Positions 15,336 through 58,581 of a stretch of DNA of 64,000 nt are shown piece by piece. Position 1 is the first letter of the stretch; every line of letters begins with the position of its first letter. The notes under the pieces were generated by a model. The model saw only the letters and a list, made by a program, of their open reading frames with translations. It was not told the DNA's origin and did no database searches. The position numbers and the translations under genes are program-made. Origin of the DNA: Octopus sinensis (Eukaryota); NCBI RefSeq assembly GCF_006345805.1, contig NW_021833827.1:1932-65931 (forward strand), in the 5' to 3' direction.

Positions 15336-15620
15336 AAATTATTTACTTTGTGTTTTGTTTACTTCGCTAGGTAGTCGTTGTAGGATCGACTAGTCACGAC
15401 TAGCTAGCGCAGATGCGCGAGTACGCGTGAGCGCGCACCGGGACCACTCTTCTTAAGTAGTACTGATGATACTCTGGTACAACTTTGAAAGACAGAAAAT
15501 GGACGAGAGTAGATTATTCTCTTGTAACTATCAAATATAAAAACTAGACAAATGTAGATTGTGCGTCTACTATTTTAAAACAGAAGTAAATGATGAGGGT
15601 AGTTTATACCTGTACACGTT

Positions 15621-16448
15621 TAATAATAATGAAATTATTGTATACAGTGCTCAGGTGCACCACAACTTGTCAAAAGTACGTATAAAGCATATGCAGTAAT
15701 GTATAGATGTCTGGGAAGTGAACAGTGTATGAGTCAGATACATGCTTGCGTGTGTATGGAGGGGAGAAAATCAGGTGTAATGTTGGCGAATCTCAGGAAG
15801 CATGGAAGTTTTGAAGGATGCAGTGCTCTGACAACTAACAACTGATGCCGGCAGTTTGTTCCATGCTTCAGCAACTCTCAGCGTGAAAAAATGTTTCCTG
15901 AAGTCATGGGAGCTGTGCTGTTTTCTGACTTTGTAAATATGTCCACAGGTGTTAGACAGGTGGAGTTTGAAAAGGTGCTGAGTTATTGTTTGTAAGATGG
16001 TTAATAATTTTATGGGTGTCTGCATATGCAGTAATGTATAGATGTCTGGGAAGTGAACAGTGTATGAGTCAGATACATGCTTGCGTGTGTATGGAGGGGA
16101 GAACATAAGGTGTAGTGTTGGTGAATCTCAGAAAGCATGGAAGTTTTGAAGGATGCAGTGCTCCGACAACTAACAACTGATGCCGGCAGTTTGTTCCATG
16201 CTCCAGCAACTATTAGCGTGAAAAAATGTTTCCGAAAGTCATGGGAGCTGTGCTGTTTTCTGACTTTGTAAACATGTCCACGGGTGTTAGACAGGTGGAG
16301 TTTGAAAAGGTGCTCAGAGTTATTGTTTGTAAGATGGTTAATAATTTTATGGGGGTCTGCCAAGTCAGCTGCCAGACGTCGGAGTTTCAATGTATCCATG
16401 CTCAGGGAAGTATGGCGTTCAGAACATGGCAAATGCCTGATGGAGGGT
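15621..16448 (-). mobile_element. CR1-clade LINE 3' end with a 335-bp tandem duplication
   Basis: Peptide LKLRRLAADL...TRGHVYKVRKQHSSHDFRKHFFTLRVAEAWNKLPASVVSCQSTASFK is a classic CR1 ORF2 C-terminus. GCATATGCAGTAATGTA occurs at 15687 and 16022. Confidence 0.88.
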
Positions 16449-17263
16449 GTAAATCAGATACTTACAACTTTGTTAAAAAGTAATTAGATGAACGTAGGTG
16501 ATAGTCTTACAACTTTAAAGAGTGAAAACAAACGGATGTAGATGGTATTCTCGTGACTTTCAAAAGGAGAAAACTGACGAATTTTGATAAAACTCTGACA
16601 AATTTAAAAAGAGAAAACGGCCGAAATTAGAGCATATTATTACTCGCCTGAAAAAATGAAAATGGACGAAGGTTGACCGTATACTTAAAACTTTAAAAAA
16701 AAATTTTAATGTATGTCGTAGTCTTACAATTTTGAAACAGAAGAAAGAGACGAAGATAGATCATACTCGTATACCGTTGAGAAAGAAAATGGTTGAGGGT
16801 TAAAAATAAATACTTACGACTTTATAAAAGCGAAAATGGAGGAAGACTATATTCTTACAACTTTGAAAAAGAGAAGAGAAAATGGACGGGAGTAGATAAT
16901 GCTCTTGTAACTCTCAAATATGAAAACCAGACATATTTAAATTGTACTCTTTCAACTTGAAAGGAGAAAGAACAAACAAAGGGAGATCATAGACCATTAA
17001 GAAAGAAAACGGTCGGGAAAGAATCATATTTTTACGACTTTGTAAAAAAGAAAATGGATGAACGTAGATGATTTTCTTACAAATTTAGAAAGTGAAAACA
17101 AACGGAGGTGGATCGGATTCGTAGTTTTGTCAGTTTTAAAAAGAGAAACCAGACGATCGTTGATCATACTCTGACAGATTTTAAAAGAGAAAACGACCGA
17201 AAGTAGACCATGCTAGTACAACTCTGAAAAAGAGAAAATGGATGAAGGTAGCTTAAAAGTTTT

Positions 17264-17652
17264 TAGGAAGCACTCCGTCGAATACGATAACGAGGGTTCC
17301 GGTTGATCCGAATCAACGGAACAGCCTGCTTGTGAAATTAACGTGTAAGTGGCTGAGCACTCCACAGACACGTTCACCCTTAACGTAGTTCTCGGGGATA
17401 TTCAGCGTGACAAAGAGAGTGACAAGGCCGGCCCCTTGAAATACAGGTACAACAGAAACAGGAAGTAAGAGTGAGAGAAAGTTGTGGTGAAAGAGTACAG
17501 CAGGGATCACCACCATCCCCTTGCCGGAGCCTCGTGGAGCTTTTTAGGTGTTTTTGCGCAATAAACACTCACAACGCCCGGTCTGGGAATCGAAAACGCG
17601 ATCCTATGACAACGAGTCCGCTGCCCTAACCACTGGGCCATAGCGACTCCAC
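17264..17652 (-). mobile_element. SINE family C with ~15-bp TSD
   Basis: Reverse complement of 51550-51935. Flanks are TAGCTTAAAAGTTTT (17249-17263) and TAGCTTAAAACTTTT (17653-17667). Confidence 0.88.
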
Positions 17653-17811
17653 TAGCTTAAAACTTTTAGAGAGAAAAGAAAGGGACGAAGGTGATTGAAG
17701 GTAAACCATACGCTTACAACTGGCAAAGCCTCATAACTTTCTAACAAAAACAATCATACGGAAGTACATGAGAGTAGATAGTACTGTTACAACTATATGA
17801 AATAAAAACCA

Positions 17812-20800
17812 GGGGAAGGTGGATCATAGTTTTAAAATTTTGAAGATTGAGAAAAGGGACAAATGTTGAAGATATTCTTACGAGTTTGATAAAGAGGAAA
17901 CTAAAGAAGGTAGATCATAGTTTTAAAATTTTGAAGATTGAGAAGAGGAACAAATGTTGAGGATATTCGTACGAGTTTGATAAAGAGGAAACTAAAGAAG
18001 GTAGATCATAGTTTTAAAATTTTGAAGATTGAGAAAAGGAACAACTGTTACGATATTCTTACGAGTTTGATAAAGAGGAAACTAAAGAAGGTAGATCATA
18101 GTTTTAAAATTATGAAGATTGGGAACTGGAACAAATGTTGATGATATTCTGAGTCTGATAAAGAGGAAACTAAAGAAGGTAGATCATAGTTTTAAAATTT
18201 TGAAGAAGAGAAAAGGAACAAATGTTGACGATATTCTGAGTTTGATAAAGAGGAAACTAAAGAAGGTAGATCATAGTTTTAAAATTTTGAAGATTAAGAA
18301 AAGGAACAAATGTTGACGATATTCTTACGAGTTTGATAAAGAGGAAACTAATGAAGGTAGATCATAGTTTTAAAATTTTGAAGATTGGGAAAAGGAACAA
18401 ATGTTGAGGATATTCTTACGAGATTCATAAGGAGGAAACTAAAGAAGGTAGATCATAGTTTTAAAATTTTGAAGATTGGGAAAAGGAACAAATGTTGACG
18501 ATATTCTTACGAGATTGATAAAGAGGAAACTAAAGAAGGTAGATCATAGTTTTAAAATTTTGAAGAAGAGAAAAAGAACAAATGTTGACGATATTCTGAG
18601 TTTGATAAAGAGGAAACTAAAGAAGGTAGATCATAGTTTTAAAATTTTGAAGATTAAGAAAAGGAACAAATGTTGACGATATTCTTACGAGTTTGATAAA
18701 GAGGACACCAAAGAAGTTAGATCATAGTTTTAAAATTTTGAAGAAGGGAAAAGGGACAAATTTTGACGATATTCTTCCGAGTTTGATAAAGAGGAAACTA
18801 AAGAAGGTAGATCATAGTTTTAAAATTTTGAAGAAGAGAAAAGGAACAAATTTTGACGATATTCTTACGAGTTTGATAAAGAGGAAACTAAAGAAGGTAG
18901 ATCATAGTTTTAAAATTTTGAGGAAGAGAAAAGGAACAAATGTTGACGATATTCTTACGAGTTTGATAAAGAGGAAACTAAAGAAGGTAGATCATAGTTT
19001 TAAAATTTTCAAGATTGAGAAAAGGAACAAATGTTGACGATATTCTTACGAGATTGATAAAGAGGAAACTAAAGAAGGTAGATCATAGATTTAAAATTTT
19101 GAAGATTGGGAAAAGGAACAAATGTTGAGGATATTCTTACGAGATTGATAAAGAGGAAACTAAAGAAGGTAGATCATAGTCTTAAAATTTTGAAGATTGA
19201 GAAAAGGAACAAATGTTGAGGATATTCTGAGTTTGATAAAGAGGAAACTAAAGAAGGTAGATCATAGTTTTAAAATTTTGAAGAAGAGAAAAGGAACAAA
19301 TGTTGATATTCTTACGAGATTGATAAAGAGGAAACTAAAGAAGGTAGATCATAGTTTTAAAATTTTGAAGATTGGGAAAAGGAACAAATGTTGAGGATAT
19401 TCTTACGAGATTGATAAAGAGGAAACTAAAGAAGGTAGATCATAGTTTTAAAATTTTGAAGATTGGGAAAAGGAACAAATTTTGATGATATTCTTACGAG
19501 ATTGATAAAGAGGAAACTAAAGAAGGTAGATCATAGTTTTAAAATTTTGAAGATTGAGAAAAGGAACAAATGTTGAGGATAATCTTACGAGATTGATAAA
19601 GAGGAAACTAAAGAAGGTAGATCATAGTTTTAAAATTTTGAAGATTGGGAAAAGGAACAAATGTTGAGGATATTCTTACAAGATTGATAAAGAGAAAACT
19701 AAAGAAGGTAGATCATAGTTTTAAAATTTTGAAGAAGAGAAAGGGAACAAATGTTGATGATATTCTTACGATATTGATAAAGAGGAAACTAAAGAAGGTA
19801 GATCATAGTTTTAAAATTTTGAAGATTAAGAAAAGGAACAAATGTTGACGATATTCTTACGAGTTTGATAAAGAGGACACCAAAGAAGTTAGATCATAGT
19901 TTTAAAATTTTGAAGAAGGGAAAAGGGACAAATTTTGACGATATTCTTCCGAGTTTGATAAAGAGGAACTAAAGAAGTAGATCATAGTTTTAAAATTTTG
20001 AAGAAGAGAAAAGGAACAAATTTTGACGATATTCTTACGAGTTTGATAAAGAGGAAACTAAAGAAAGTAGATCATAGTTTTAAAATTTTGAGGAAGAGAA
20101 AAGGAACAAATGTTGACGATATTCTTACGAGTTTGATAAAGAGGAAACTAAAGAAGGTAGATCATAGTTTTAAAATTTTGAAGATTGAGAAAAGGAACAA
20201 ATGTTGACGATATTCTTACGAGATTGATAAAGAGGAAACTAAAGAAGGTAGATCATAGTTTTAAAATTTTGAAGATTGGGAAAAGGAACAAATGTTGAGG
20301 ATATTCTTACGAGATTGATAAAGAGGAAACTAAAGAAGGTAGATCATAGTCTTAAAATTTTGAAGATTGAGAAAAGGAACAAATGTTGAGGATATTCTGA
20401 GTTTGATAAAGAGGAAACTAAAGAAGGTAGATCATAGTTTTAAAATTTTGAAGAAAAGAAAAGGAACAAATGTTGATGATATTCTTACGAGATTGATAAA
20501 GAGGAAACTAAAGAAGGTAGATCATAGTTTTAAAATTTTGAAGATTGGGAAAAGGAACAAATGTTGAGGATAATCTTACGAGATTGATAAAGAGGAAACT
20601 AAAGAAGGTAGATCATAGTTTTAAAATTTTGAATATTGGGAAAAGGAACAAATGTTGATGATATTCTTACGAGATTGATAAAGAGGAAACTAAAGAAGGT
20701 AGATCATAGTTTTAAAATTTTGAAGATTGAGAAAAGTAACAAATGTTGAGGATATTCTTACGAGATTGATAAAGAGGAAACTAAAGAAGGTAGATCATAG

Positions 20801-23800
20801 TTTTAAAATTTTGAAGATTGAGAAAAGGAAGAAATGTTGAGGATAATCTTACGAGATTGATAAAGAGGAAACTAAAGAAGGTAGATCATAGTTTTAGAAT
20901 TTTGAAGATTGGGAAAACGAACAAATGTTGAGGATATTCTTACGAGATTCATAAAGAGGAAAGTAAAGAAGGTAGATCATAGTTTTAAAATTTTGAAGAT
21001 TGAGAAAAGCAACAAATGTTGAGGATATTCTTACAAGATTGATAAAGAGGAAACTAAAGAAGGTAGGTCGTAGTTTTAAAATTTTGAAGATTGGGAAAAC
21101 GAACAAATGTTGAGGATATTCTTACGAGATTGATAAAGAGGAAACTAAAGAAGGTAGATCATAGTTTTAAAATTTTGAAGATTGAGAAAAGGAACAAATG
21201 TTGAGGATATTCTTACGAGATTGATAAAGAGGAAACTAAAGAAGGTAGATCATAGTTTTAAAATTTTGAAGATTGAGTAAAGGAACAAATTTTGAGGATA
21301 TTCTTACGAGATTGAAAAAGAGGAAACTAAAGAAGGTAGATCATAGTTTTAAAATTTTGAAGATTGGGAAAACGAACAAATGTTGAGGATATTCTTACGA
21401 GATTGATAATGAGGAAACTAAAGAAGGTAGATCATAGTTTTAAAATTTTGAAGAAGAGAAAAGGAACAAATGTTGACGATATTCTGAGTTTAATAAAGAG
21501 GAAACTAAAGAAGGTAGATCATAGTTTTAAAATTTTGAAGAAGAGAAAAGGGTCAAATGTTGACAATATTCTGAGTTTGATAAAGAGGAAACTAAAGAAG
21601 GTAGATCATAGTTTTAAAATTTTGAAGAAGAGAAAAGGGACAAATGTTGACGATATTCTTACGAGTTTGATAAAGAGGAAACTAAAGAAGGTAGATCATA
21701 GTTTTAAAATTTTGAAGATTAAGAAAAGGAACAAATGTTGACGATATTCTTACGAGTTTGATAAAGAGGACACTAAAGAAGGTAGATCATAGTTTTAAAA
21801 TTTTGAAGAAGGGAAAAGGAACAAATTTTGACGATATTCTTACGAGTTTGATAAAGAGGAAACTAAAGAAGGTAGATCATAGTTTTTAAAATTTTGATGA
21901 AGAGAAAGGAACAAATTTTGACGATATTCTTACGAGTTTGATAAAGAGGAACTAAAGAAGGTAGATCATAGTTTTAAAATTTTGAAATTGAGAAAAGGAA
22001 AAATGTTGACGATATTTTTACGAGATTGATAAAGAGGAAACTAAAGAAGGTAGATCATAGTTTTAAAATTTTGAAGAAGAGAAAAGGAACAAATGTTGAG
22101 GATATTCTTACGAGATTGATAAAGAGGAAACTAAAGAAGGTAGATCATAGTTTTTAAATTTTGAAGATTGAGAAAAGGAACAAATGTTGAGGATATTCTG
22201 AGTTGATAAAGAGGAAACTAAAGAAGGTAGATCATAGTTTTAAAATTTTGAAGATTGAGAAAAGGAACAAATGTTGAGGATATTCTGAGTTTGATAAAGA
22301 GGAACTAAAGAAGGTAGATCATAGTTTTAAAATTTTGAAGATTGAGAAAAGGAACAAATGTTGATGATATTCTTACGAGATTGATAAAGAGGAAACTAAA
22401 GAAGGTAGATCAAAGTTTTAAAATTTTGGAGAAGAGAAAAGGAACAAATGTTGATGATATTCTTACGAGATTGATAAAGAGGAAACTAAAGAAGGTAGAT
22501 CATAGTTTTTTTAAAATTTTGAAGATTGGGAAAAGGAACAAATGTTGACGATGTTCTTACGAGATTGGTAAAGGGAACTAAAGAAGGTAGATCATAGTTT
22601 TAAAATTTTGAAGATTGAGAAAAGGAACAAATGTTGAGGATATTCTTACGAGATTGATAAAGAGGAAACTAAAGAAGGTAGATCATAGTTTTAAAATTTT
22701 GAAGATTGGGAAAAGGAACAAATGTTGAGGATATTCTTACGAGATTGATAAACAGAACTAAAGAAGGTAGATCATAGTTTTAAAATTTGAAGATTGGGAA
22801 AAGGAACAAATGTTGAGGATATTCTTACGAGTTGATAAAGAGGAAACTAAAGAAGGTAGATCATAGTTTTAAAATTTTGAAGAAGAGAAAAGGAACAAAT
22901 GTTGAGGATATTCTTACGAGATTGATAAAGAGGAACTAAAGAAGGTAGATCATAGTTTTAAAATTCTGAAGATTGGAAAAGGAACAAATGTTGAGGATAT
23001 TCTTACGAGATTGATAAAGAGAAAAGTAAAGAAGGTAGATCATAGTCTTAAAATTTTGAAGATTGAGAAAAGGAACAAACGTTGAGGATATTCTGATTTG
23101 ATAAAGAGGAAACTAAAGAAAGTAGATCATAGTTTTAAAATTTTGAAGAAGAGAAAAGGAACAAATGTTGATGATATTCTTACGAGATTGATAAAGAGGA
23201 AACTAAAGAAGGTAGATCATAGTTTTAAAATTTTGAAGATTGGGAAAAGGAACAAATGTTGAGGATATTCTTACGAGATTGATAAAGAGGAAACTAAAGA
23301 AGGTAGATCATAGTTTAAAATTTTGAAGATTGGGAAAAGGAACAAATGTTGAGGATATTCTTACGAGATTGATAAAGAGGAAACTAAAGAAGGTAGATCA
23401 TAGTTTTAAAATTTTGAAGAAGAGAAAAGGAACAAATGTTGATGATATTCTTACGCTATTGATAAAGAGGAAACTAAAGAAGGTAGATCATAGTTTTAAA
23501 ATTTTGAAGATTGGGAAAAGGAACAAATGTTTAGGATATTCTTACGAGATTGATAAAGAGGAAACTAAAGAAGGTAGATCATAGTTTTAAAATTTTGAAG
23601 ATTGGGAAAAGGAACAAATGTTGAGGTTATTCTTACGAGATTGATAAAGAGGAAACTAAAGAAGGTAGATCATAATTTTAAAATATTAAAGAAGAGAAAA
23701 GGAACAAATGTTGACGATATTCTTACGAGTTTGAGAAAGAGGAAACTAGAGAAGGTAGATCATAGTCTTAAAGTTTTGAAGAAGAGAAAAGTAACAAATT

Positions 23801-26800
23801 TTGAGGATATTCTAACGAGTTTGGTAAAGAGGAAACTAAAGAAGGTAGATCATAGTTTTAAAATTTTGAAGATTGGGAAAAGGAACAAATGTTGAGGATA
23901 TTCTTACGAGATTGATAAAGAGGAAACTAAAGAAGGTAGATCATAGTTTTAAAATTTTGAAGATTGAGAAAAGGAACAAATGTTGAGAATATTCTGAGTT
24001 TGATAAAGAGGAAACTAAAGAAGGTAGATTATAGTTTTAGAATTTTGAAGATTGAGAAAAGGAACAAATGTTGCTGATATTCTTACGAGATTGATAAAGA
24101 GGAAACTAAAGAAGGTAGATCATAGTTTTAAAATTTTGAAGAAGAAAAAAGGAACAAATGTTGATGATATTCTTACGAGATTGATAAAGAGGAAACTAAA
24201 GAAGGTAGATCATAGTTTTAAAATTTTGAAGATTGAGAAAAGGAACAAATGTTGAGAATATTCTGAGTTTGATAAAGAGGAAACTAAAGAAGGTAGATTA
24301 TAGTTTTAGAATTTTGAAGATTGAGAAAGGAACAAATGTTGCTGATATTCTTACGAGATTGATAAAGAGGAAACTAAAGAAGGTAGATCATAGTTTTAAA
24401 ATTTTGAAGAAGAAAAAGGAACAAATGTTGATGATATTCTTACGAGATTGATAAGAGGAAACTAAAGAAGGTAGATCATAGTTTTAAAATTTTGAAGATT
24501 GAGAAAAGGAACAAATGTTGAGAATATTCTGAGTTTGATAAAGAGGAAACTAAAGAAGGTAGATTATAGTTTTAGAATTTTGAAGATTGAGAAAAGGAAC
24601 AAATGTTGCTGATATTCTTACGAGATTGATAAAGAGGAAACTAAAGAAGGTAGATCATAGTTTTAAAATTTTGAAGATTGGGAAAATGAACAAATGTTGA
24701 CGATGTTCTTACGAGATTGATAAAGAGGAAACTAAAGATGGTAGATCATAGTTTTAAAATTTTGAAGATTGAGTAAAGGAACAAATTTTGAGGATATTCT
24801 TACGATTGATTAAAAAAGAGGAAACTAAAGAAGGTAGATCATAGTTTTAAAATTTGAAGATTGGAAAACGAACAAATGTTGAGGATATTCTTACGAGATT
24901 GATATGAGGAAACTAAAGAAGGTAGATCATAGTTTTAAAATTTTGAAGAAGAGAAAAGGAACAAATGTTGACGATATTCTGAGTTTAATAAAGAGGAAAC
25001 TAAAGAAGGTAGATCATAGTTTTAAAATTTTGAAGAAGAGAAAAGGGTCAAATGTTGACAATATTCTGAGTTTGATAAAGAGGAAACTAAAGAAGGTAGA
25101 TCATAGTTTTAAAATTTTGAAGAAGAGAAAAGGACAAATGTTGACGATATTCTTACGAGTTTGATAAAGAGGAAACTAAAGAAGGTAGATCATAGTTTTA
25201 AAATTTTGAAGATTAAGAAAAGGAACAAATGTTGACGATATTCTTACGAGTTTGATAAAGAGGACACTAAAGAAGGTAGATCATAGTTTTAAAATTTTGA
25301 AGAAGGGAAAAGGGACAAATGTTGAGGATATTCTTACGAGTTTGATAAAGAGGAAACTAAAGAAGGTAGATCATAGTTTTAAAATTTTGAAGAAGAGAAA
25401 AGGAACAAATTTTGACGATATTCTTACGAGTTTGATAAAGAGGAAACTAAAGAAGGTAGATCATAGTTTTAAAATTTTGAAGATTGAGAAAAGGAACAAA
25501 TGTTGACGATATTTTTACGAGATTGATAAAGAGGAAACTAAAGAAGGTAGATCATAGTTTTAAAATTTTGAAGAAGAGAAAAGGAACAAATGTTGAGGAT
25601 ATTCTTACGAGATTGATAAAGAGGAAACTAAAGAAGGTAGATCATAGTTTTAAAATTTTGAAGATTGAGAAAAGGAACAAATGTTGAGGATATTCTGAGT
25701 TTGATAAAGAGGAAACTAAAGAAGGTAGATCATAGTTTTAAAATTTTGAAGATTGAGAAAAGGAACAAATGTTGAGGATATTCTGAGTTTGATAAAGAGG
25801 AAACTAAAGAAGGTAGATCATAGTTTTAAAATTTTTGAAGATTGAGAAAAGGAACAAATGTTGATGATATTCTTACGAGATTGATAAAGAGGAAACTAAA
25901 GAAGGTAGATCAAAGTTTTAAAATTTTGGAGAAGAGAAAAGGAACAAATGTTGATGATATTCTTACGAGATTGATAAAGAGGAAACTAAAGAAGGTAGAT
26001 CATAGTTTTAAAATTTTGAAGATTGGGAAAAGGAACAAATGTTGACGATGTTCTTACGAGATTGGTAAAGAGGAAACTAAAGAAGGTAGATCATAGTTTT
26101 AAAATTTTGAAGATTGAGAAAAGGAACAAATGTTGAGGATATTCTTACGAGATTGATAAAGAGGAAACTAAAGAAGGTAGATCATAGTTTTAAAATTTTG
26201 AAGAAGAAAAAAGGAACAAATGTTGATGATATTCTTACGAGATTGATAAAGAGGAAACTAAAGAAGGTAGATCATAGTTTTAAAATTCTGAAGATTGAGA
26301 AAAGGAACAAATGTTGAGAATATTCTGAGTTTGATAAAGAGGAAACTAAAGAAGGTAGATTATAGTTTTAGAATTTTGAAGATTGAGAAAAGGAACAAAT
26401 GTTGCTGATATTCTTACGAGATTGATAAAGAGGAAACTAAAGAAGGTAGATCATAGTTTTAAAATTTTGAAGAAGAAAAAAGGAACAAATGCTGATGATA
26501 TTCTTACGAGATTGATAAAGAGGAAACTAAAGAAGGTAGATCATAGTTTTAAAATTTTGAAGATTGAGAAAAGGAACAAATGTTGAGAATATTCTGAGTT
26601 TGATAAAGAGGAAACTAAAGAAGGTAGATTATAGTTTTAGAATTTTGAAGATTGAGAAAAGGAACAAATGGCTGATATTCTTACGAGATTGATAAAGAGG
26701 AAACTAAAGAAGGTAGATCATAGTTTTAAATTTTGAAGATTGGGAAAATGAACAAATGTTGACGATGTTCTTACGAGATTGATAAAGAGGAAACTAAAGA

Positions 26801-38800: not shown

Positions 38801-41800
38801 TTTAAAATTTTGAAGAAGAGAAAAGGAACAAATGTTGATGATATTCTTACGAGATTGATACAGAGGAAACTAAAGAATGGAGATCATAGTTTTAAAATTT
38901 TGAAGATAGGGAAAAGGAACAAATGTTGAGGATATTCTTACAAGATTGATAAAGAGGAAACTAAAGAAGGTAGATCATAGTTTTAAAATTTTGAAGAAGA
39001 GAAAAGTAACAAATTTTGAGGATATTCTTACGAGTTTGGTAAAGAGGAAACTAAAGAAGGTAGATCATAGTTTTAAAATTTTGAAGATTGAGAAAAGGAA
39101 CAAATGTTGACGATATTCTTACGAGTTTGATAAAGAGGAAACTAAAGAAGGTAGATCATAGTTTTAAAATTTTGAAGAAGTGAAAAGGAACAAATGTTGA
39201 GGATATGCTTACGAGTTTGATAAAGAGGAAAATAAAGAAGGTAGATCATAGTTTTAAAATTTTGAAGAAGAGAAAAGGGACAAATGTTGACGATATTCTT
39301 ACGAGTTTGATAAAGAGGAAACTAACGAAGGCAGATCAACGTTTTAAAATTTTAAAGAAGAGAAAAGGGACAAATGTTGACGATATTCTGAGTTTCATAA
39401 AGAGGAAACTAAAGAAGGTAGATCATAGTTTTATAATGTTGAAGAAGTGAAAAGGGACAAATGTTGACGATATTCTTACGAGTTTGATAAAGAGGTAGAT
39501 CACAGTTTGATAAAGAAGGTAGATCACAGTTTTAAAATTTTGAAGATTGAGAAAAGGAAGAAATGTTGAGGATATGCCTACGAGTTTGATAAAGAGGAAA
39601 CTAAAGAAGGTAGATCATAGTTTTAAAATTTTGAAGAAGAGAAAAGGGACAAATGTTGACGATATTCTTACGAGTTTGATAAAGAGGAAACTAACGAAGG
39701 CAGATCATTGTTTTAAAATTTTAAAGAAGAGAAAAGGGATAAATGTTGACGATATTCTGAATTTGATAAAGAGGAAACTAAAGAAGGTAGATCATAGTTT
39801 TAAAATTTTGAAGAAGAGAAAAGGAACAAATGTTGATGATATTCTTACGAGATTGATAAAGAGGAAACTAAAGAAGGTAGATCATAGTTTTAAAATTTTG
39901 AAGATAGGAAAAAGGAACAAATGTTGAGGATATTCTTACGAGATTGATAACGAGGAAACTAAAGAAGGTAGATCATAGTTTTAAAATTTTAAAGAAGAGA
40001 AAAGGAACAAATGTTGACGATATTCTTACGAGTTTGATAAAGAGGAAACTAAAGAAGGTAGATCATAGTTTTAAAATTTTGAAGATTGAGAAAAGGAACA
40101 AATGTTGAGGATATCCTTACAAGTTTGATAAAGAGGAAACTAAAGAAGGTAGATCATAGTTTTAAAATTTTGAAGATTGAGAAAAGGAACAATTGTTGAC
40201 GATATTCTTACAAGTTTGATAATGAGGAAACTAAAGAAGGTAGACCATAGTTTTAAAATTTTGAAGATTGAGAAAAGGAACAAATGTTGACGATATTCTT
40301 ACGAGTTTGATAAAGAGGAAACTAAAGAAGGTAGATCATAGTTTTAAAATTTTGAAGATTGAGAAAAGGAACAAATGTTGAGGATATTCTTACGAGTTTG
40401 ATAAAGAGGAAACTAATGAAGGTAGATCATAGAGTTAAAATTTTGAAGAAGAGAAAAGGGACAAATGTTGAGGATATTCTTACGAGTTTGATAAAGAGGA
40501 AACTAACGAAGGTAGATCATAGTTTTAAAATTTTGAAGAAAGAAAGGACAAATGTTGACGATATTCTTACGAGTTTGATAAAGAGGAACTAAAGAGTAGA
40601 TCATAGTTTTAAAATTTTGAAGATTGAGATAGGAACAAATGTTGACGATATTCTTACGAGTTTGATAAAGGAAACTAAAGAAGGTAGATCATAGTTTTAA
40701 AATTCTGAACAAGAGAAAAGGGACAAATGTTGACGATATTCTTACGATTTGATAAAGAGGAAACTAAAGAAGGTAGATCATATTTTTAAAATTTTGAAGA
40801 AGAGAAAAGGACAATGTTGACGATATTCTTACGAGTTTGATAAGAGGAACTAACGAAGGCAGATCATTGTTTTAAAATTTTAAAGTAGAGAAAAGGATAA
40901 AGTTGACGATATCTGAGTTTGATAAAGAGGAAACTAAAGGTAGATCATAGTTTTAAAATTTTGAAGAAGAGAAAAGGAATAAATGTTGATGATATTCTTA
41001 CGAGATTGATAAAGAGGAAACTAAAGAGGTAGATCATAGTTTTAAAATTTTGAAGATAGGAAAAGGAACAATGTTGAGGATATTCTTACGAGATTGATAA
41101 AGAGGAAACTAATAAGGTAGATCATAGTTTTAAAATTTTAAAGAAGAGAAAAGGAACAAATGTTGACGATATTCTTACGAGTTTGATAAAGAGGAAACTA
41201 AAGAAGGTAGATCATAGTTTTAAAATTTTGAAGAAGAGAAAAGTAACAAATTTTGAGGATATTCTTACGAGTTTGGTAAAGAGGAAACTAAAGAAGGTAG
41301 ATCATAGTTTTAAAATTTTGAAGATTGAGAAAAGGAACAAATGTTGAGGATATCCTTACAAGTTTGATAAAGAGGAAACTAAAGAAGGTAGATCATAGTT
41401 TTAAAATTTTGAAGATTGAGAAAAGGAACAAATGTTGAGGATATTCTTACAAGTTTGATAAAGAGGAAACTAAAGAAGGTCGATCATAGTTTTAAAATTT
41501 TGAAGATTGAGAAAAGGAACAAATGTTGACGATATTCTTACAAGTTTGATAATGAGGAAACTAAAGAAGGTAGATTATAGTTTTAAAATTTTGAAGATTG
41601 AGAAAAGGAACAAATGTTGAGGATATTCTTACGAGTTTGATAAAGAGGAAACTAATGAAGGTAGATCATAGTTTTAAAATTTTGAAGAAGAGAAAAGGGA
41701 CAAATGTTGAGGATATTCTTACGAGTTTGATAAAGAGGAAACTAAAGAAGGTAGATCATAGTTTTAAAATTTTGAAGAAGAGAAAAGGGACAAATGTTGA

Positions 41801-44800
41801 GGATATTCTTACGAGTTTGATAAAGAGGAAACTAAAGAAGGTAGATCATAGTTTTAAAATTTTGAAGATTGAGAAAAGGGACAAATGTTGATGATATTCT
41901 TACGAGTTTGATAAAGAGGAAACTAAAAAAGGTAGATCATAGTTGTAAAATGTTGAAGATTGGGAAAAGGAACAAATGTTGACGATATTCTTACGAGTTT
42001 GATAAAGAGGAAACTAAAGAAGGTAGATCATAGTTTTAAAATTTTGAAGAAGAGAAAAGGAACAAATGTTGACGATATTCTTACGAGTTTGATAAAGAGG
42101 AAACTAAACAAGGTAGATCATAGATTTAAAATTTTGAAGAAGAGAAAAGGAACAAATGTTGACGATATTCTTACGAGTTTGATAAAGAGGAAGCTAAAGA
42201 AGGTAGATCATAGTTTTATAATTTTGAAGAAATGAAATGGGACAAATGTTGACGATATTCTTACGAGTTTGATAAAGAGGAAACTAAAGAAGGTAGATCA
42301 TAGTTTTAAAATTTTGAAGATTGAGAAAAGGGACAAATGTTGATGATATTCTTATGAGTTTGATAAAGAGGAAACTAAAGAAGGTAGATCATAGTTTTAA
42401 AATTTTGAAGAAGAGAAAAGGGACAAATGTTGAGGATATTCTTACGAGATTGATAAAGAGGAAACTAAAGAAGGTAGATCATAATTTCAAAATTTTGAAG
42501 ATTGGGAAAAGGAACAAATGTTGAGGATATGCTTACGAGTTTGATAAAGAGGAAACTAAAGAAGGTAGGTCATAGTTTTAAAATTTTGAAGAAGTGAACA
42601 GGAACAAATGTTGAGGATATTCTTACGAGTTTGATAAAGAGAAAGCTAAAGAAGGTAGATCATAGTTTTAAAATTTTGAAGATTGAGAAAAGGAACAAAT
42701 GTTGAGGATATGCTTACGAGTTTGATAAAGAGGAAACTAAAGAAGGTAGATCGTAGTTTTAAAATTTTGAAGAAGAGAAAAGGGACAAATGTTGACGATA
42801 TTCTTACGAGTTTGATAAAGAGGAAACTAAAGAAGGTAGATCATAGTTTTAAAATTTTGAAGATTGAGAAAAGGAAGAAATGTTGAGGATATGCTTACGA
42901 GTTTGATAAAGAGGAAACTAAAGAAGGTAGATCATAGTTTTAAAATTTTGAAGAAGAGAAAAGGGACAAATGTTGACGATATTCTTACGAGTTTGATAAA
43001 GAGGAAACTAACGAAGGCAGATCATTGTTTTAAAAATTTAAAAAAGAGAAAAGGGATAAATGTTGACGATATTCTGAGTTTGATAAAGAGGAAACTAAAG
43101 AAGGTAGATCATAGTTTTAAAATTTTGAAGAAGAGAAAAGGAACAAATGTTGATGATATTCTTACGAGATTGATAAAGAGGAAACTAAAGAAGGTAGATT
43201 ATAGTTTTAAAATTTTGAAGATAGGGAAAAGGAACAAATGTTGAGGATATTCTTACGAGATTGATAAAGAGGAAACTAAAGAAGGTAGATCATAGTTTTA
43301 AAATTTTGAAGAAGAGAAAAGGAACAAATGTTGATGATATTCTTACGAGTTTGATAAAGAAGAAACTAAAGAAGGTAGATCATAGTTTTAAAATTATGAA
43401 GATTGGGAAAAGGAACAAATGTTGAGGATATTCTTATGAGATTGATAAAGAGGAAACTAAAGAAGGTAGATCATAGTTTTAAAATTTTAAAGAAGAGAAA
43501 AGAAACAAATGTTGACGACATTCTTACGAGTTTGATAAAGAGGAAACTAAAGAAGGTAGATCATAGTTTTAAAATTTTGAAGAAGAGAAAAGTAACAAAT
43601 TTTGAGGAATTTCTTACGAGTTTGGTAAAGAGGAAACTAAAGAAGGTAGATCATAGTTTTAAAATTTTGAAGATTGAGAAAAGGAACAAATGTTGAGGAT
43701 ATTCTTACAAGTTTGATAAAGAGGAAACTAAAGAAGGTAGATCATAGTTTTAAAATTTTGAAGATTGAGAAAAGGAACAAATGTTGACGATATTCTTACA
43801 AGTTTGATAATGAGGAAACTAAAGAAGGTAGATCATAGTTTTAAAATTTTGAAGATTGAGAAAAGGAAGAAATGTTGACGATATTCTTACAAGTTTGATA
43901 AAGAGGAAACTAAAGAAGGTAGATCATAGTTTTAAAATTTTGAAGATTGAGAAAAGGAACAAATGTTGACGATATTCTTACGAGCTTGATAAAGAGGAAA
44001 CTAAAGAAGGTAGATCATAGTTTTAAAATTTTGAAGATTGAGAAAAGGAACAAATGTTGATGATATTCTTACGAGATTGATAAAGAGGAAACTAAAGAAG
44101 GTAGATCATAGTTTTAAAATTTTGAAGATAGGGAAAAGGAACAAATGTTGAGGATATTCTTACGAGATTGATAAAGAGGAAACTAAAGAAGGTAGATCAT
44201 AGTTTTAAAATTTTGAAGAAGAGAAAAGGACAAATGTTGATGATATTCTTACGAGTTTGATAAAGAAGAACTAAAGAAGGTAGATCATAGTTTTAAAATT
44301 TTGAAGATTGGGAAAAGGAACAAATGTTGAGATATTCTTACGAGATTGATAAAGAGGAAACTAAAGAAGGTAGATCATAGTTTTAAAATTTTAAAGAAGA
44401 GAAAAGGAACAAATGTTGACGATATTCTTACGAGTTTGATAAAGAGGAAACTAAAGAAGGTAGATCATAGTTTTAAAATTTTGAAGAAGAGAAAAGTAAC
44501 AAATTTTGAGGATATTCTTACGAGTTTGGTAAAGAGGAAACTAAAGAAGGTAGATCATAGTTTTAAAATTTTGAAGATTGAGAAAAGGAACAAATGTTGA
44601 GGATATCCTTACAGTTTGATAAAGAGGAACTAAAGAGTAGATCATAGTTTTAAAATTTTGAAGATTAGAAGAAAAGGAAACAAATTGTTGACGATATTCT
44701 TACAAGTTTGATAATGAGGAAACTAAAGAGGTAGATCATAGTTTTAAAAATTTTGAAGATTGAGAAAAAAGGAAGAAATGTTGACGATATTCTTACAAGT

Positions 44801-47800
44801 TTGATAAAGAGGAAACTAAAGAAGGTAGATCATAGTTTTAAAATTTTGAAGATTGAGAAAAGGAACAAATGTTGACGATATTCTTACGAGCTTGATAAAG
44901 AGGAAACTAAAGAAGGTAGATCATAGTTTTAAAATTTTGAAGATTGAGAAAAGGAACAAATGTTGATGATATTCTTACGAGTTTGATAAAGAGGAAACTA
45001 AAGAAGGTAGATCATAGTTTTAAAATTTTGAAGATAGGAAAGAAACAATGTTGAGGATATTCTTACGAGATTGATAAAGAGGAAACTAAAGAAGGTAGAT
45101 CATAGTTTTAAAATTTTGAAGAAGAGAAAAGGAACAAATGTTGATGATATTCTTACGAGTTTGATAAAGAAGAAACTAAAGAAGGTAGATCATAGTTTTA
45201 AAATTATGAAGATTGGGAAAAGGAACAAATGTTGAGGATATTCTTACGAGATTGATAAAGAGGAAACTAAAGAAGGTAGATCATAGTTTTAAAATTTTAA
45301 AGAAGAGAAAAGGAACAAATGTTGACGATATTCTTACGAGTTTGATAAAGAGGAAACTAAAGAAGGTAGATCATAGTTTTAAAATTTTGAAGAAGAGAAA
45401 AGTAACAAATTTTGAGGATATTCTTACGAGTTTGGTAAAGAGGAAACTAAAGAAGGTAGATCATAGTTTTAAAATTTTGAAGATTGAGAAAAGGAACAAA
45501 TGTTGAGGATATCCTTACAAGTTTGATAAAGAGGAAACTAAGAAGGTAGATCATAGTTTTAAAATTTTGAAGAAGAGAAAAGGAACAAATGTTGAGGATA
45601 TTCTTACAAGTTTGATAAAGGGAAACTAAAGAAGTAGATCATAGTTTTAAAATTTTGAAGATTGAGAAAAGGAACAAATGTTGACGATATTCTTACAAGT
45701 TTGATAAAGGAGGAAACTAAAGAAGGTAGATCATAGTTTTAAAATTTTGAAGATTGAGAAAAGAAAAAATGTTGAGGATATTCTTACGAGTTTGATAAAG
45801 AGGAAACTAAAGAAGGTAGATCATAGTTTTAAAATTTTGAAGATTGAGAAAAGGAACAAATGTTGACGATATTCTTACGAGTTGATAAAGAGGAAACTAA
45901 AGAAGGTAGATCATAGTTTTAAAATTTTGAAGATTGAGAAAAGGACAAATGTTGAGGATATTCTTACGAGTTTGATAGAGGAAACTAAAGAAGGTAGATA
46001 CATAGTTTTAAAATTTTAAGAAGAGAAAAGGGACAAATGTTGTTGAGGATATTCTTACGAGTTTGATAAAGAGGAAACTAAAGAAGGTAGATCATAGTTT
46101 TAAAATTTTGAAGATTGAGAAAAGGAACAAATGTTGACGATATTCTTACGAGTTTGATAAAGAGGAAACAAAGAAGTAGATCATAGTTTTAAAATTTTGA
46201 AGAAGAGAAAAGGGACAAATGTTGAGGATATTCTACGAGTTTGATAAAGAGGAAACTAAAGAAGGTAGATCATAGTTTTAAAATTTTGAAGATTGAGAAA
46301 AGAAACAAATGTTGACGATATTCCAACGAGTTTGATAAAGAGGAAACTAAAGAAGGTAGATCATTGTTTTAAAATTTTTGAAGAGAGAGAACAAGGACAA
46401 ATTTGACGATATTCTTACGAGTTTGATAAAGAGGAAACTAACGAGGCAGATCATTGTTTTAAAATTTTAAAGAAGAGAAAAGGGACAATGTTGACGATAT
46501 TCTGAGTGATAAGAGGAAACTAAGAAGGTAGATCATAGTTTTATAATTTTGAAGAAGTGAAAAGGGAGAAATGTTGACGATATTCTTACGAGTTGATGAT
46601 AAGAGGAAACTAAAGAAGGTAGATCATAGTTTTAAAATTTTGAAGAAGAGAAAAGGAACAAATGTTGACGATATTCTTACGAGTTTGATAAAGAGGAAAC
46701 TAAAGAAGGTAGATCTAGTTTTTAAAATTTTGAAGAAGAGAAAAGTAACAAATTTTGAGGATATTCTTACGAGTTTGGTAAAGAGGAAACTAAGAAGGTA
46801 GATCATAGTTTTAAAATTTTGAAGAATTGAGAAAAGGAACAAATGTTGAGGATATCCTTACAAGTTTGATAAAGAGGAAACTAAAGAAGGTAGATCATGT
46901 TTGTCAAAATTTTGAGATTGAGAAAAGGAACAAATGTTGAGGATATTCTTACAAGTTTGATAAAGAGAGGAAACTAAAGAAGGTAGATCATAGTTTTAAA
47001 ATTTTGAAGATTGAGGAGAAAAGGAACAAATGTTGACGATATTCTTACAAGTTTGATAATGAGGAACTAAAGAAGATAGATCATAGTTTTAAAATTTTGA
47101 AGATGAGAAAAGGAACAAATGTTGAGATATTCTTACAAGTTTGATAATGAGGAACTAAGAAGGTAAATCATAGTTTTAAAATTTTGAAGATTGAGAAAAG
47201 GAACAAATGTTGACGCGATTCTTACGACGAGTTTGATAAAGAGGAAACTAAAGAAGGTAGATCATAGTTTTAAAATTTTGAAGATTGAGAAAAGGACAAA
47301 TGTTGAGGATATTCTTACAGTTTGATAAAGAGGAAACTAACGAAGGTAGATCATAGTTTTAAAATTTTGAAGAAGAGAAAAGGGACAAATGTTGAGGATA
47401 TTCTTACGAGTTTGATAAAGAGGAAACTAACGAAGGTAGATCATAGTTTTAAAATTTTGAAGATTGAGAAAAGGGACAAATGTTGAGGATATTCTTACAA
47501 GTTGATAAAGAGGAACTAACGAAGTAGATCATAGTTTTAAAATTTTGAAGAGAGAAAAGGGACAAATGTTGAGGATATTCTTACGAGTTTGATAAGAGGA
47601 AACTAACGAAGGTAGATCATAGTTTTAAAATTTTGAAGATCGAGAAAAGGAACAAATGTTGACGATATTCTTACAAGTTTGATAATGAGGAAACTAAAGA
47701 AGGTAGATCATAGTTTTAAAATTTTGAAGATTGAGAAAAGGAACAAATGTTGACGATATTCTTACGAGTTTGATAAAGAGGAAACTAAAGAAGGTAGATC

Positions 47801-49086
47801 ATAGTTTTAAAATTTTGAAGATTGAGAAAAGGGACAAATGTTGAGGATATTCTTACGAGTTTGATAAGAGGAAACTAACGAAGGTAGATCATAGTTTTAA
47901 AATTTTGAAGAAGAGAAAAGGGACAAATGTTGTGGATATTCTTACGAGTTTGATAAAGAGGAAACTAACGAAGGTAGATCATAGTTTTAAAATTTTGAAG
48001 ATTGAGAATAGGAACAAATGTTGACGATATTCTTACGAGTTTGATAAAGAGGAAACTAAAGAAGGTAGATCATAGTTTTAAAATTTTGAAGAAGAGAAAA
48101 GGGACAAATGTTGAGGATATTCTTACGAGTTTGATAAAGAGGAAACTAAAGAAGGTAGATCATAGTTTTAAAATTTTGAAGATTGAGAAAAGAAACAAAT
48201 GTTGACGATATTCCAACGAGTTTGATAAAGAGGAAACTAAAGAAGGTAGATCATTGTTTTAAAATTTTGAAGAAGAGAAAAGGGACAAATTTGACGATAT
48301 TCTTACGAGTTTGATAAAGAGGAAACTAACGAAGGCAGATCATTGTTTTAAAATTTTAAAGAAGAGAAAAGGGACAAATGTTGACGATATTCTGAGTTTG
48401 ATAAAGAGGAAACTAAAGAAGGTAGATCATAGTTTTATAATTTTGAAGAAGTGAAAAGGGAGAAATGTTGACGATATTCTTACGAGTTTGATAAAGAGGA
48501 AACTAAAGAAGGTAGATCATAGTTTTAAAATTTTGAAGATTGAGAAAAGGAACAAATGTTGAGGATATGCTTACGAGTTTGATAAAGAGGAAACTAAAGA
48601 AGGTAGATCATTGTTTTAAAATTTTGAAGAAGAGAAAAGGGACAAATGTTGAGGATATTCTTACGAGTTTGATAAAGAGGAAACTAACGAAGGCAGATCA
48701 TTTTTTAAAAATTTTGAAGAAGAGAAAAGGGACAAATGTAGACGATATTCTTACGAGTTTGATAAAGAGGAAACTAACGAAGGCAGATCATTGTTTTAAA
48801 ATTTTAAAGAAGAGAAAAGGGACAAATGTTGACGATATTCTGAGTTTGATAAAGAGGAAACTAAAGAAGTTAGATTATAGTTTTAAAATTTCGAAGAAGA
48901 GAAAAGGGACAAATGTTGACGATATGCTTACGAGTTTGATAAAGAGGAAACTAAAGAAGGTAGATCATAGTTTTAAAATTTTGAAGATTGAGAAAAGGAA
49001 CAAATGTTGAAGATATGCTTACGAGTTTGATAAAGAGGAAACTAAAGAAGGTAGATCATAGTTTTAAATTTTAGAAGAAGAGAAAA
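17812..49086 (+). repeat. Satellite DNA array, ~345 head-to-tail monomers of 87-91 bp
   Basis: Consensus GA(TTGG/TTGA/AGA)GAAAAGGAACAAATGTTGA(G/C)GATATTCT(TAC)GAG(A/T)TTGATAAAGAGGAAACTAAAGAAGGTAGATCATAGTTTTAAAATTTTGAA. No foreign insertion seen; copy number is length divided by ~90.4. Confidence 0.98.
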
Positions 49087-49110
49087 CAGACGATCACCTA
49101 TTGTATTCTT

Positions 49111-49497
49111 ACTAGCAGTATTGCCCAACGTTGCTCGGGTTTGTAAGGGAAATAACTATATAAGCATTTTTAGAGATTTATATCCAAAAAATAGCAAAAA
49201 ATGCATCTAAAAATGGAAAAAAAATTATGGTAAACCTTTTTAAAATCGTTGACTTATCATAGACATTTATAGAGAGTTACTTCCCTTATATAATAGTGAA
49301 AAAATGCATTAAAATGGAAAAAAATGATGTTAATTTTTTCTTGAATCGTAGACTCATGCTAATACCCAAAAGGGCTTGATATGAATCACAACTATAAGAT
49401 ACCCGGTTTTGGTTAAACTGCACCGCGAAATGTGGGAGTAGTTAGGAATCTAAATCGTAGGAGACAGACACACAACTTCCCTTTTATAGATAAAGAT
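49111..49497 (+). mobile_element. Non-autonomous Helitron-like element (Lep1/HINE-like ends)
   Basis: Starts ACTAGCAGTATTGCCCAACGTTGCTCGGG and ends GAGACAGACACACAACTTCCCTTTTATAGATAAAGAT. It splits an old monomer at CTT^ with no TSD. The family call is from memory of end motifs. Confidence 0.5.
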
Positions 49498-49960
49498 AAC
49501 TTGAAAGAAATGAAAATGGGTAAAGGTAGATCATACTTTTAAAACGTAAAACTTTAAAAAAATAGACAAGTGAGCGTTGATTGTACTCTTTGTAATTTAA
49601 AAGAAAAGAAAGGGGGGAATGTAGATCACACGTTCGTACCATTGAAGAAGAAAATGGTTGAAGGAAATCAAACTCTTACACCTTTATAAACGAGAAAAAG
49701 AGATGAGAATGGATGATATTCTTACAGTTTTTGAAAAGAGAAAACAGTCAAAGAAAAATTATAATCTTACAACTTTGAAGAAAAGATGAAGGTAGATGAT
49801 ATTCTAACGAGTTTAATAAAGAGGAAACTGATGAAGGCAGATCGTATTCTGGTGAGTTTGGCAAAGAGAAAACAGACGATTCTAGATCATACATGTATAA
49901 CTTTAAAGAAGAGAAAACAAGCGAAGGTAGATCATCCTCTTACAACTGTAAGAAGTAGAA
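49498..49960 (+). repeat. Diverged ~45-bp monomers flanking the satellite (right)
   Basis: Examples: GAAGGTAGATGATATTCTAACGAGTTT and GAAGGTAGATCATCCTCTTACAACT. Confidence 0.7.
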
Positions 49961-50033
49961 AATGACCATGGGCGTAACTTCGGTATAAGTACCGGATACA
50001 TTTCAAGAAAGTGTTTTTTTTATATATGTATTA

Positions 50034-50254
50034 CTTTACTACCCACAAGGGGCCTAAACACAGAGGGGACAAACAAGGACAGACAAAGGGATTAAGTCGA
50101 TTACATCGACCCCAGTGCGAAACTGGTACTTTATTTATCGACCCCGAAAGTATGAAAGGCAAAGTGGACCGCGGCGGAATTTGAACTCAGAACGTAACGA
50201 CAGACGAAATACCGCTAAGCATTTCGCCCGGTGCGCTATCGTTCCGCCAGCTCG
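50034..50254 (-). mobile_element. SINE family A
   Basis: Reverse complement of 60321-60552. Confidence 0.85.
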
Positions 50255-51300: not shown

Positions 51301-51549
51301 GAGGTCGCCTATGATTAATGTCTCTCTTAAGAGAGACAGAAAAGAGATAGGTGGACAACATCAGGGCCTACCACTGGCTTCCTAGGGGGTCACCCTTGAT
51401 GGTCCAGAGAGAGGTGGGGAGAGAGAGAGAGAGAGACTGTAAAAGGAGAGAGATAGAGAGAGACAAACACAGAAAGTGAGAATAAGAAATTAAGAGTGTG
51501 TGTATGTTTGTGTGATTGCATGTTCAAGTGTATGCTAGCGTATGTATGA

Positions 51550-54539: not shown

Positions 54540-54678
54540 TATAGCTATTATTATTAATTATTATTATTATTATTATCATTATTATTATTATATTAATTTA
54601 TTGTTGTTGTTATTATATTATTATTATTATTATTATTATCATTATTATCCATTATTATTATTATAGTTATTATGATTA

Positions 54679-54710
<32 letters not shown>

Positions 54711-55129: not shown

Positions 55130-55164
<35 letters not shown>

Positions 55165-56232: not shown

Positions 56233-56240
56233 AATACCTT

Positions 56241-58538: not shown

Positions 58539-58581
<43 letters not shown>

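What the first reader, a model, noticed from the sequence alone, without database searches (positions are those of the whole stretch)
15465..49960. Layered satellite: old 45-bp monomers outside, homogenised 90/91-bp dimer inside
The two halves of the core unit (GAAAAGGAACAAATGTTGAGGATATTCTTACGAGATTGATAAAGA and GGAAACTAAAGAAGGTAGATCATAGTTTTAAAATTTTGAAGATTG) align without gaps at 25 of 45 positions by hand count. Both flanks hold diverged monomers near AAAAGAGAAAATGGACGAAGGTAGATCATACTCTTACAACTTTGA. The ~1.7 kb of old flank contains three TE insertions (CR1, SINE C with TSD, Helitron-like) while the 31-kb core has none. This mirrors the layered expansion model known for alpha satellite; two units (~181 bp) approximate a nucleosome repeat. 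Inference: a candidate centromeric or pericentromeric satellite family.
Basis: partly seen in the sequence, partly recalled or inferred. Interest (0 to 1): 0.7.

Follow-up and report, generated by a model that had tools for sequence, protein, structure and literature searches.

The report
Two-layer octopus satellite DNA array
A 31-kb block of a 90/91-base repeat in an octopus genome grew out of the middle of an older, decayed array of 45-base repeats; this is an ordinary way for satellite DNA to evolve, and nothing here shows that it marks a centromere.

Summary
Window 17815-49086 is one uninterrupted array of 347 units, mostly 91 or 90 bp. Each unit is a dimer of two diverged 45/46-bp halves that are 61% identical in register. 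About 1.7 kb of strongly diverged 45-bp monomers lies on both sides (15447-17814 and 49087-49960), on the same strand and in register with the core. These monomers match the core halves far better than shuffled flank DNA does. Each carries B-type bases in its 5' half and A-type bases in its 3' half, so they represent the state before the dimer formed, not decayed dimers. The old flanks carry three insertions and the core carries none, although the surrounding 29.5 kb holds about one dispersed-repeat piece per kb. Private changes in the core are only 0.24% per site, which points to recent or continuing turnover.

The two age layers are real. The symmetric age gradient of alpha satellite is absent. 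There is no 181-bp periodicity. The "Helitron-like" label fails the hairpin test, and the "CR1" label is unverified. The centromere idea could not be tested: the array is small, bounded on both sides, and has no CENP-B box or dyad symmetry. The host is an Octopus. This is a new member of a known kind, of modest interest.

The parts
15447..15621 (+). Outermost left remnant of the old 45-bp monomer array (about 4 degenerate monomers)
   Evidence: Monomer matches at 15488-15533 and 15578-15623. Sequence read directly. No matches further left.
15622..16440 (-). 5'-truncated non-LTR retrotransposon 3' fragment inserted in the old layer, with an internal 335-bp tandem duplication (15687-16360)
   Evidence: TRF finds 335 bp x 2.0 at 95%. 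ORF 16010-16432(-) is 89% identical to Octopus vulgaris hypothetical proteins and 87% to a 'jockey-like' RT over 39% of its length. No Pfam domain. Boundaries are approximate.
16441..17266 (+). Main left block of old 45-bp monomers (about 18 monomers, 62-82% identical to the flank consensus)
   Evidence: Tiling and identities.
17267..17652 (-). SINE insertion with a 17/18-bp target-site duplication (17249-17266 and 17653-17669)
   Evidence: TSD TAGCTTAAAAGTTTTTAG / TAGCTTAAAACTTTTAG. Other copies at 51549-51935 (95%) and 56024-56234 (85%). A-box TGGCCCAGTGG and B-box-like TTTCGATTCC in the head. Not recognised by ARAGORN or Rfam.
17653..17814 (+). Last old monomers before the core; the junction is in register
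   Evidence: Sequence read directly; tiling.
17815..49086 (+). Core array: 347 units of the 90/91-bp A'B' dimer, purine-rich strand on top, no insertions
49087..49112 (+). First old-type monomer on the right. It starts at about 49076, in register with the last core unit and overlapping the end of the TRF call, and is cut by an insertion
   Evidence: sequence; hit at 49075-49120.
49113..49488 (.). Unclassified 376-bp non-satellite insertion with an internal repeat of about 95 bp (74%)
   Evidence: no other copy in the window; no 3' hairpin. On the - strand the ends read A|TC...CTAG|T.
49489..49960 (+). Right block of old 45-bp monomers. It includes an A-like/B-like pair at 49779-49861, the flank segment most similar to the core
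   Evidence: TRF finds 45 bp x 2.0 at 49785-49873.

Best explanation
This is a non-coding satellite DNA locus of an Octopus genome, built in two steps.

Step 1: an array of 45-bp monomers existed here. Its consensus was close to AAAAGAGAAAACAGACGAAGGTAGATCATACTCTTACAACTTTGA. The array decayed to about 57% pairwise identity and collected retroelement insertions.

Step 2: two neighbouring monomers that had diverged became a single unit of amplification. One (A') had changed mainly in its 5' half and the other (B') mainly in its 3' half. This 91-bp dimer expanded inside the old array by in-register unequal exchange and block duplication, pushing the remains of the old array to both sides.

The core is still turning over. 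Variants are shared among many units, blocks of about 1 kb are duplicated at 98-99.7% identity, and private mutations are rare. That turnover explains why the core holds no transposable elements.

Shown: the anatomy, the ancestry of the halves, the age contrast and the in-register junctions. Inferred: the mechanism (unequal crossing-over or replication-linked duplication) and the absence of any sequence-specific function. Most probably this is a neutral or selfish heterochromatic repeat island. A role at a centromere is possible but has no positive evidence here.
For: The array is contiguous with period 91. The halves are related at shift 45/46.

The flank monomers are strand-specific and far above the shuffled null. 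Across 46 alignment columns the flank consensus agrees with both halves at 27, with B only at 10 and with A only at 4. All three differ at 4 columns, and A=B differs from the flank at only 1. The flank consensus therefore sits at the node ancestral to both halves.

The flanks show no A/B alternation. Nearly every flank monomer has B-states in its 5' half, and most lean to A-states in the 3' half. Left-left, right-right and left-right identities are equal at 56-58%, as expected for one old array that was split. Both junctions are in register.

In the core, 5.5% of sites differ from consensus but only 0.24% are singletons. Blocks of 6-13 units are duplicated at 98-99.7%.

The core has 0 insertions in 31.3 kb. 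The 1.7 kb of flank has 3, and the other 29.5 kb of the window has at least 30 dispersed-repeat intervals covering 36%.

The array is non-coding. The 91-bp consensus has stops in all frames, the ORFs have no protein homologues, and all Pfam scores are below cut-off.
Against: Pairwise identity of core units is only about 91.5%, so 'homogenised' is relative. There is no regular higher-order repeat, only patches of 3-, 6- and 10-unit periodicity.

The relic most like the core (49755-49850) lies at the distal end of the right flank, not next to the core. That fits either a displaced source pair or a gene-conversion patch, and it is not predicted by a simple outward age gradient.

The similarity of the two halves taken alone is only modestly significant (p about 0.013 against the best shift of shuffles). 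The case rests on combining it with the flank monomers.

Only one locus was seen, and no other copy of the family could be retrieved.
Confidence: 0.8

Rival explanations
1. Edge decay of a single dimeric array. The flanks are simply end units of the same 91-bp array. Unequal exchange cannot homogenise array ends, so these units decayed in place.
For: The flanks are in the same orientation and register as the core. Array ends are known to escape homogenisation (established population-genetic models of tandem arrays; my own knowledge).
Against: Decayed dimers should alternate between A-like and B-like and should keep the derived states of A or B. Instead there is no alternation, and the flank monomers typically combine B-states in the 5' half with A-states in the 3' half. 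A and B share only 1 state that differs from the flank consensus. The identity drop at the boundary is abrupt.
Confidence: 0.07
2. Functional centromeric or pericentromeric satellite. The array, or a larger family it belongs to, binds CENP-A or flanks the kinetochore domain.
For: It is AT-rich (29% GC) and tandem, has a layered anatomy and a TE-free core. No octopus centromere repeat is described in the literature I searched, so the position is vacant.
Against: The array is 31 kb and is bounded on both sides by ordinary SINE-rich DNA within the 64-kb window. Units are about 91.5% identical, not near-identical. There is no CENP-B box. Dyad symmetry is not above shuffles (z = +1.04). There is no 181-bp periodicity. 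No other copies were found by the only external scans possible. Layering and TE exclusion are general properties of any actively turning-over array.
Confidence: 0.1
3. Array derived from the internal tandem repeats of a transposable element, as with Helitron/Helentron-borne satellites in bivalves, and later expanded.
For: The window shows other TE-derived tandem arrays, such as the SINE-derived 184-bp array at 13642-14491. Mollusc satellites are often TE-borne (my own knowledge).
Against: The 45-bp monomer occurs nowhere else in the window on either strand. The sequences just outside 15447 and 49960 share nothing but an unrelated SINE. No terminal repeats or TE ends frame the locus.
Confidence: 0.08
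4. Repetitive protein-coding exon. The 90-bp unit variants read as KRKGTNVDDILTSLIKRKLKKVDHSFKILK.
For: ORFs of 125-156 aa run through stretches of 90-bp and 87-bp units.
Against: The 91-bp units (145 of 347) break the frame, and the consensus has stops in all frames. There are no homologues among 5.8 billion proteins. All Pfam scores are below cut-off.
Confidence: 0.01

Closest known systems
Human alpha satellite: higher-order-repeat (HOR) core flanked by diverged monomeric layers
   Same: Younger multimeric units sit in the middle and older diverged monomers of the same family lie on both sides in the same orientation. Retroelement insertions are restricted to the old layers. Expansion from within pushes the old copies outwards.
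   Different: The monomer is 45 bp, not 171 bp, and the multimer is only a dimer. Copies are about 91.5% identical, not 97-99%. There is one abrupt step, not several graded symmetric layers. The array is 31 kb, not megabases. There is no CENP-B box, and centromere location is unknown.
Drosophila Responder (Rsp) satellite: canonical Left/Right dimers with variant repeats at the array ends
   Same: It is a dimeric unit made of two related, diverged halves. The canonical dimers are concentrated inside the array and the divergent variants lie at the edges (my own knowledge, not tested here).
   Different: The sequence and host are unrelated and the monomer length differs (120 bp against 45 bp). 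Here the edge repeats represent the monomer from before the dimer formed, not variant dimers. No link to meiotic drive is known.
Mollusc satellite DNAs associated with transposable elements (for example bivalve Helitron/Helentron-borne repeats)
   Same: Same phylum, AT-rich short units, and arrays embedded in TE-rich DNA.
   Different: No TE framing or TE-internal copy of this monomer was found in the window.

Membership tests
Satellite DNA | Long head-to-tail tandem array of a unit of tens to hundreds of bp | tested here: met
   347 contiguous units of 90/91 bp, 31.3 kb in all.
Satellite DNA | Non-coding | tested here: met
   Stops in all frames of the 91-bp consensus. No protein homologues. 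Pfam scores below cut-off.
Satellite DNA | High copy number genome-wide or at multiple loci | not testable with these tools
   Only the window is available. The metagenome scan found nothing and the window's ORFs are not in the protein collection.
Layered (alpha-satellite-like) array organisation | Core of multimeric units more homogeneous than the monomers that make them up | tested here: met
   Dimer copies are about 91.5% identical, the halves are 61% identical, and singletons are 0.24% per site.
Layered (alpha-satellite-like) array organisation | Flanks of diverged monomers of the same family, in the same orientation, on both sides | tested here: met
Layered (alpha-satellite-like) array organisation | TE insertions in old layers, none in the active core | tested here: met
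   3 insertions in 1.7 kb of flank and 0 in the 31.3-kb core. Background is at least 30 repeat intervals in 29.5 kb.
Layered (alpha-satellite-like) array organisation | Symmetric age gradient, with divergence increasing with distance from the core | tested here: not met
   The step at both junctions is abrupt, flank identity to the core is flat, and the most core-like relic is distal at 49755-49850.
Centromeric satellite | CENP-A / kinetochore occupancy at the primary constriction | not testable with these tools
   Needs CUT&RUN/ChIP and FISH.
Centromeric satellite | Very large array, usually the most abundant tandem repeat of the genome | tested here: inconclusive
   The array here is 31 kb and bounded on both sides inside the window. 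Genome-wide abundance is unknown.
Centromeric satellite | Recognition motif or non-B DNA potential (CENP-B box or dyad symmetry); not universal | tested here: not met
   No CENP-B box on either strand. DNA folding z = +1.04 against shuffles.
Helitron (insert 49113-49488) | 5'-TC and 3'-CTRR ends, insertion between A and T, no TSD | tested here: inconclusive
   On the - strand the junctions can be read as A|TC...CTAG|T, but the boundaries were chosen by eye and no second copy fixes them.
Helitron (insert 49113-49488) | GC-rich hairpin just upstream of the 3' CTRR | tested here: not met
   MFE -3.1 kcal/mol, z = 0.08 against shuffles.
tRNA-derived SINE (17267-17652, - strand) | Dispersed copies, target-site duplication, internal pol III A and B boxes | tested here: met
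   Copies at 51549-51935 (95%) and 56024-56234. 17/18-bp TSD. A box and B-box-like motif 45 nt apart.
tRNA-derived SINE (17267-17652, - strand) | Head recognisable as a tRNA | tested here: not met
   ARAGORN finds none. Rfam finds none even at E<=1.
CR1-clade LINE (15622-16440, - strand) | CR1-type reverse transcriptase / ORF2 phylogeny | tested here: inconclusive
   Only a C-terminal tail is present. Homologues in O. vulgaris include one named 'jockey-like' RT. No Pfam domain in the tail or in the homologues.

The most novel reading that the evidence does not exclude
This 45-bp/91-bp family is the centromeric or pericentromeric satellite of an octopus. The window would then capture a small island or an array edge. 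It would be the first centromere-associated repeat described for a cephalopod, and its layered growth would record centromere turnover.
Probability: 0.1. Interest if true: 0.6.

Novelty: new member of a known kind. Interest (0 to 1): 0.27.

Why it matters
Satellite DNA and centromere sequences of cephalopods are essentially undescribed in the literature I could search. A clean locus that keeps both the ancestral monomer and the derived dimer is a tidy case of how higher-order units arise and expand. It also gives a ready FISH or k-mer probe for asking where such arrays sit on octopus chromosomes. In itself the mechanism is textbook satellite evolution, and nothing indicates a new kind of element.

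Tried and rejected
- Coding origin of the repeat: rejected.
- Regular higher-order repeat or 181-bp super-unit: rejected. Identity is flat across lags, with only local 3-, 6- and 10-unit patches.
- Edge-decay model: disfavoured by the diagnostic-column analysis.
- TE framing of the whole locus: nothing found.
- Helitron label for insert 3: the hairpin test failed.
- tRNA recognition of the SINE head by ARAGORN or Rfam: negative.
- Locating the window on a chromosome by exact look-up of 8 ORF variants: none are in the collection.
- Other copies of the satellite: 0 hits in the metagenome pattern scan. No satellite in two fetched octopus-related loci, where the one F-like hit in L001 is an A-rich chance match.
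- Literature on octopus satDNA or centromere repeats: nothing relevant.
- CENP-B box and dyad symmetry: absent.
Full report
**What is there.** TRF finds a single large array at 17815-49086 with period 91 (equally 181), 347.5 copies and 92% matches. The array has 29% GC, a GC skew of about +0.6 and 66% purines on the + strand. A glocal tiling with the 91-bp consensus gives 345 high-scoring and 2 weaker units that abut one another. The only irregularity is 10 bp at 39505-39514, a local duplication of satellite sequence. Unit lengths are 91 bp (145), 90 bp (114) and 87-89 bp (65). The core therefore contains no foreign insertion.

**The dimer.** The circular self-identity of the 91-mer is highest at shifts 45/46 (44/91). 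About 1.3% of shuffles reach that value at any shift, and fewer than 0.1% reach it at shift 45/46. In the register of the flank monomers the halves are:
- A' = AGATTGAGAAAAGGAACAAATGTTGAGGATATTCTTACGAGTTTGA
- B' = TAAAGAGGAAACTAAAGAAGGTAGATCATAGTTTTAAAATTTTGA

These are 61% identical to each other.

**The flanks.** It finds none at the same threshold on the + strand elsewhere in the window.

| Probe | Hits on flank (+ strand) | Hits on - strand | Mean in 200 dinucleotide shuffles | Maximum in shuffles |
|---|---|---|---|---|
| A' | 9 | 0 | 1.1 | 4 |
| B' | 14 | 0 | 1.8 | 5 |

**Ancestry.** Of 46 aligned columns:
- 27 are identical in A', B' and the flank consensus.
- 10 have flank = B' only.
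- 4 have flank = A' only.
- 4 have all three different.
- 1 has A' = B' different from the flank.

So A' and B' share almost no derived state, and the flank consensus sits at their common ancestor. Monomer by monomer there is no A-like/B-like alternation. Nearly every flank monomer carries B-states in its 5' half (the GAAGGTAGATCATA block), and most lean towards A-states in the 3' half (the CTCTTACAACTTTGA block). This argues against the idea that the flanks are decayed end copies of the dimer. They are copies of the monomer from before the dimer formed. A' changed mostly in its 5' half and B' mostly in its 3' half.

Left-left, right-right and left-right pairwise identities are all 56-58%, as expected if one old array was split in two. 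Both junctions are in register: a B'-type monomer on the left begins as old sequence and ends as core. On the right the monomer after the last B' begins AGAAGAGAAAA, like the 90-bp core variant, and then continues as old sequence. In-register junctions favour homology-driven expansion in situ over the import of a foreign array.

**Age contrast.** Core units differ from their consensus at 5.5% of sites. Only 0.24% of sites are singletons, and half of the differences sit in six high-frequency variant columns. Blocks of 6-13 units recur at irregular distances with 98-99.7% identity. Variant composition splits the array into two domains near 35.8 kb. This is the signature of continuing unequal exchange and block duplication.

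There is no array-wide higher-order repeat. Identity is flat at 0.913-0.921 for lags 1-30 and declines only slightly beyond (0.903 at lag 300). Patches of 3/6-unit periodicity occur at 22-30 kb and of 10-unit periodicity at 41.5-44.5 kb. Lag 2 is not better than lag 1, so the 181-bp "nucleosome" remark has no support in the sequence.

**Insertions.**
1. ~15622-16440 (- strand). This is the 3' tail of a non-LTR retrotransposon with an internal 335-bp tandem duplication. Its ORF is 89% identical to Octopus vulgaris hypothetical proteins and matches one protein named "jockey-like" reverse transcriptase. No Pfam domain is present, so "CR1" is plausible but unverified.
2. 17267-17652 (- strand). 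This is a SINE with a 17/18-bp target-site duplication, a 95% identical copy at 51549-51935 and a partial copy at 56024-56234. It has an A box and a B-box-like motif. ARAGORN and Rfam do not recognise a tRNA in it.
3. 49113-49488. This is a 376-bp insert with no other copy in the window. Its ends can be read as A|TC...CTAG|T on the - strand, but the expected 3' hairpin is absent (z = 0.08). The Helitron label is not supported.

The other 29.5 kb of the window holds at least 30 dispersed-repeat intervals covering 36%, counted from self-similarity alone. Zero insertions in 31.3 kb of core is therefore far below expectation.

**Host and context.** The retroelement homologues place the window in an Octopus genome. 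The species and the chromosomal position could not be established. No other locus of the satellite could be retrieved. The searchable literature describes no satellite or centromere repeat of octopus.

**Interpretation.** The best-supported reading is a two-step satellite: an old 45-bp monomeric array, within which a diverged adjacent pair became a 91-bp unit that expanded in register and is still turning over. That turnover keeps the core free of transposable elements. I rate this at about 0.8.

The resemblance to alpha-satellite layering is real for three features: a multimeric core, monomeric flanks on both sides, and TEs only in the old layer. It fails on the graded symmetric age series. 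The step is abrupt, and the most core-like relic (49755-49850, about 88% identical to the A'-to-B' junction of the core) lies at the far end of the right flank.

The centromere inference remains untested. The array is small and bounded, its units are only about 91.5% alike, and there is no CENP-B box and no excess dyad symmetry. Layering with TE exclusion is expected of any active tandem array. I put that reading at about 0.1.

**Verdict.** This is a new member of a known kind, and interest is modest.

Noticed in passing
window 21364-21741, 37289-37669, 38462-38929, 39547-39927, 42864-43244, 48540-49010 (+): Runs of the 90-bp (and 87-bp) unit variants keep one frame open and give ORFs of 125-156 aa with the 30-residue repeat KRKGTNVDDILTSLIKRKLKKVDHSFKILK. 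The ancestral 45 bp is also a multiple of 3. There are no protein homologues and no Pfam family above cut-off, so this is taken as chance.
   Followed up: yes
window 49755-49861: An adjacent A-like/B-like monomer pair in the old right flank is the flank segment most similar to the core (about 88% over the A'-to-B' junction), yet it lies about 700 bp from the core edge. It may be a relic of the source pair or a gene-conversion patch.
   Followed up: partly
window 17815-35800 versus 35800-49086: The core has two variant domains. At unit column 71 (GAGATTGAT or GAGTTTGAT) A and T are mixed on the left and T is almost fixed on the right. The right part also has more 90-bp units and slightly lower identity.
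   Followed up: partly
window 39481-39532: A local rearrangement inside the core: a 24-bp piece (AGTTTGATAAAGAAGGTAGATCAC) is repeated 2.2 times, producing the only off-register stretch of the array.
   Followed up: partly
window 13642-14491 (also 50029-50243 and 56231-56605): A SINE-like 184-bp sequence forms a tandem array of 4.6 copies at 96%. Single or double copies of the same element lie elsewhere. This is an example of a dispersed element becoming a tandem repeat.
   Followed up: no
window 57285-58168 and 58184-58245: A 12-bp minisatellite (ATAAGCGATGTG, 74 copies) lies next to 62 bp that match (79%) the 3' end of the LINE fragment at 15624-15685. This suggests the minisatellite is the tail of the same LINE family.
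   Followed up: no
window 15687-16360: The LINE fragment in the old flank carries an internal 335-bp tandem duplication (95% identical) that duplicates the C-terminal coding tail.
   Followed up: partly
window 7353-7493 and 55492-55832: A GC-rich 62/63-bp unit (…GGCACGTAAAAAGCACCATCC…) is tandemly repeated 2.3-4.5 times inside another dispersed repeat family that has several copies in the window.
   Followed up: no
window 3044-4552, 54546-55181, 58516-59323: Very long AT-rich microsatellites, (ATAT)n of 1.5 kb, (TAT)n of 0.6 kb, and (TG)n/(TA)n, surround the locus. The non-satellite part of the window has no evident host gene.
   Followed up: no
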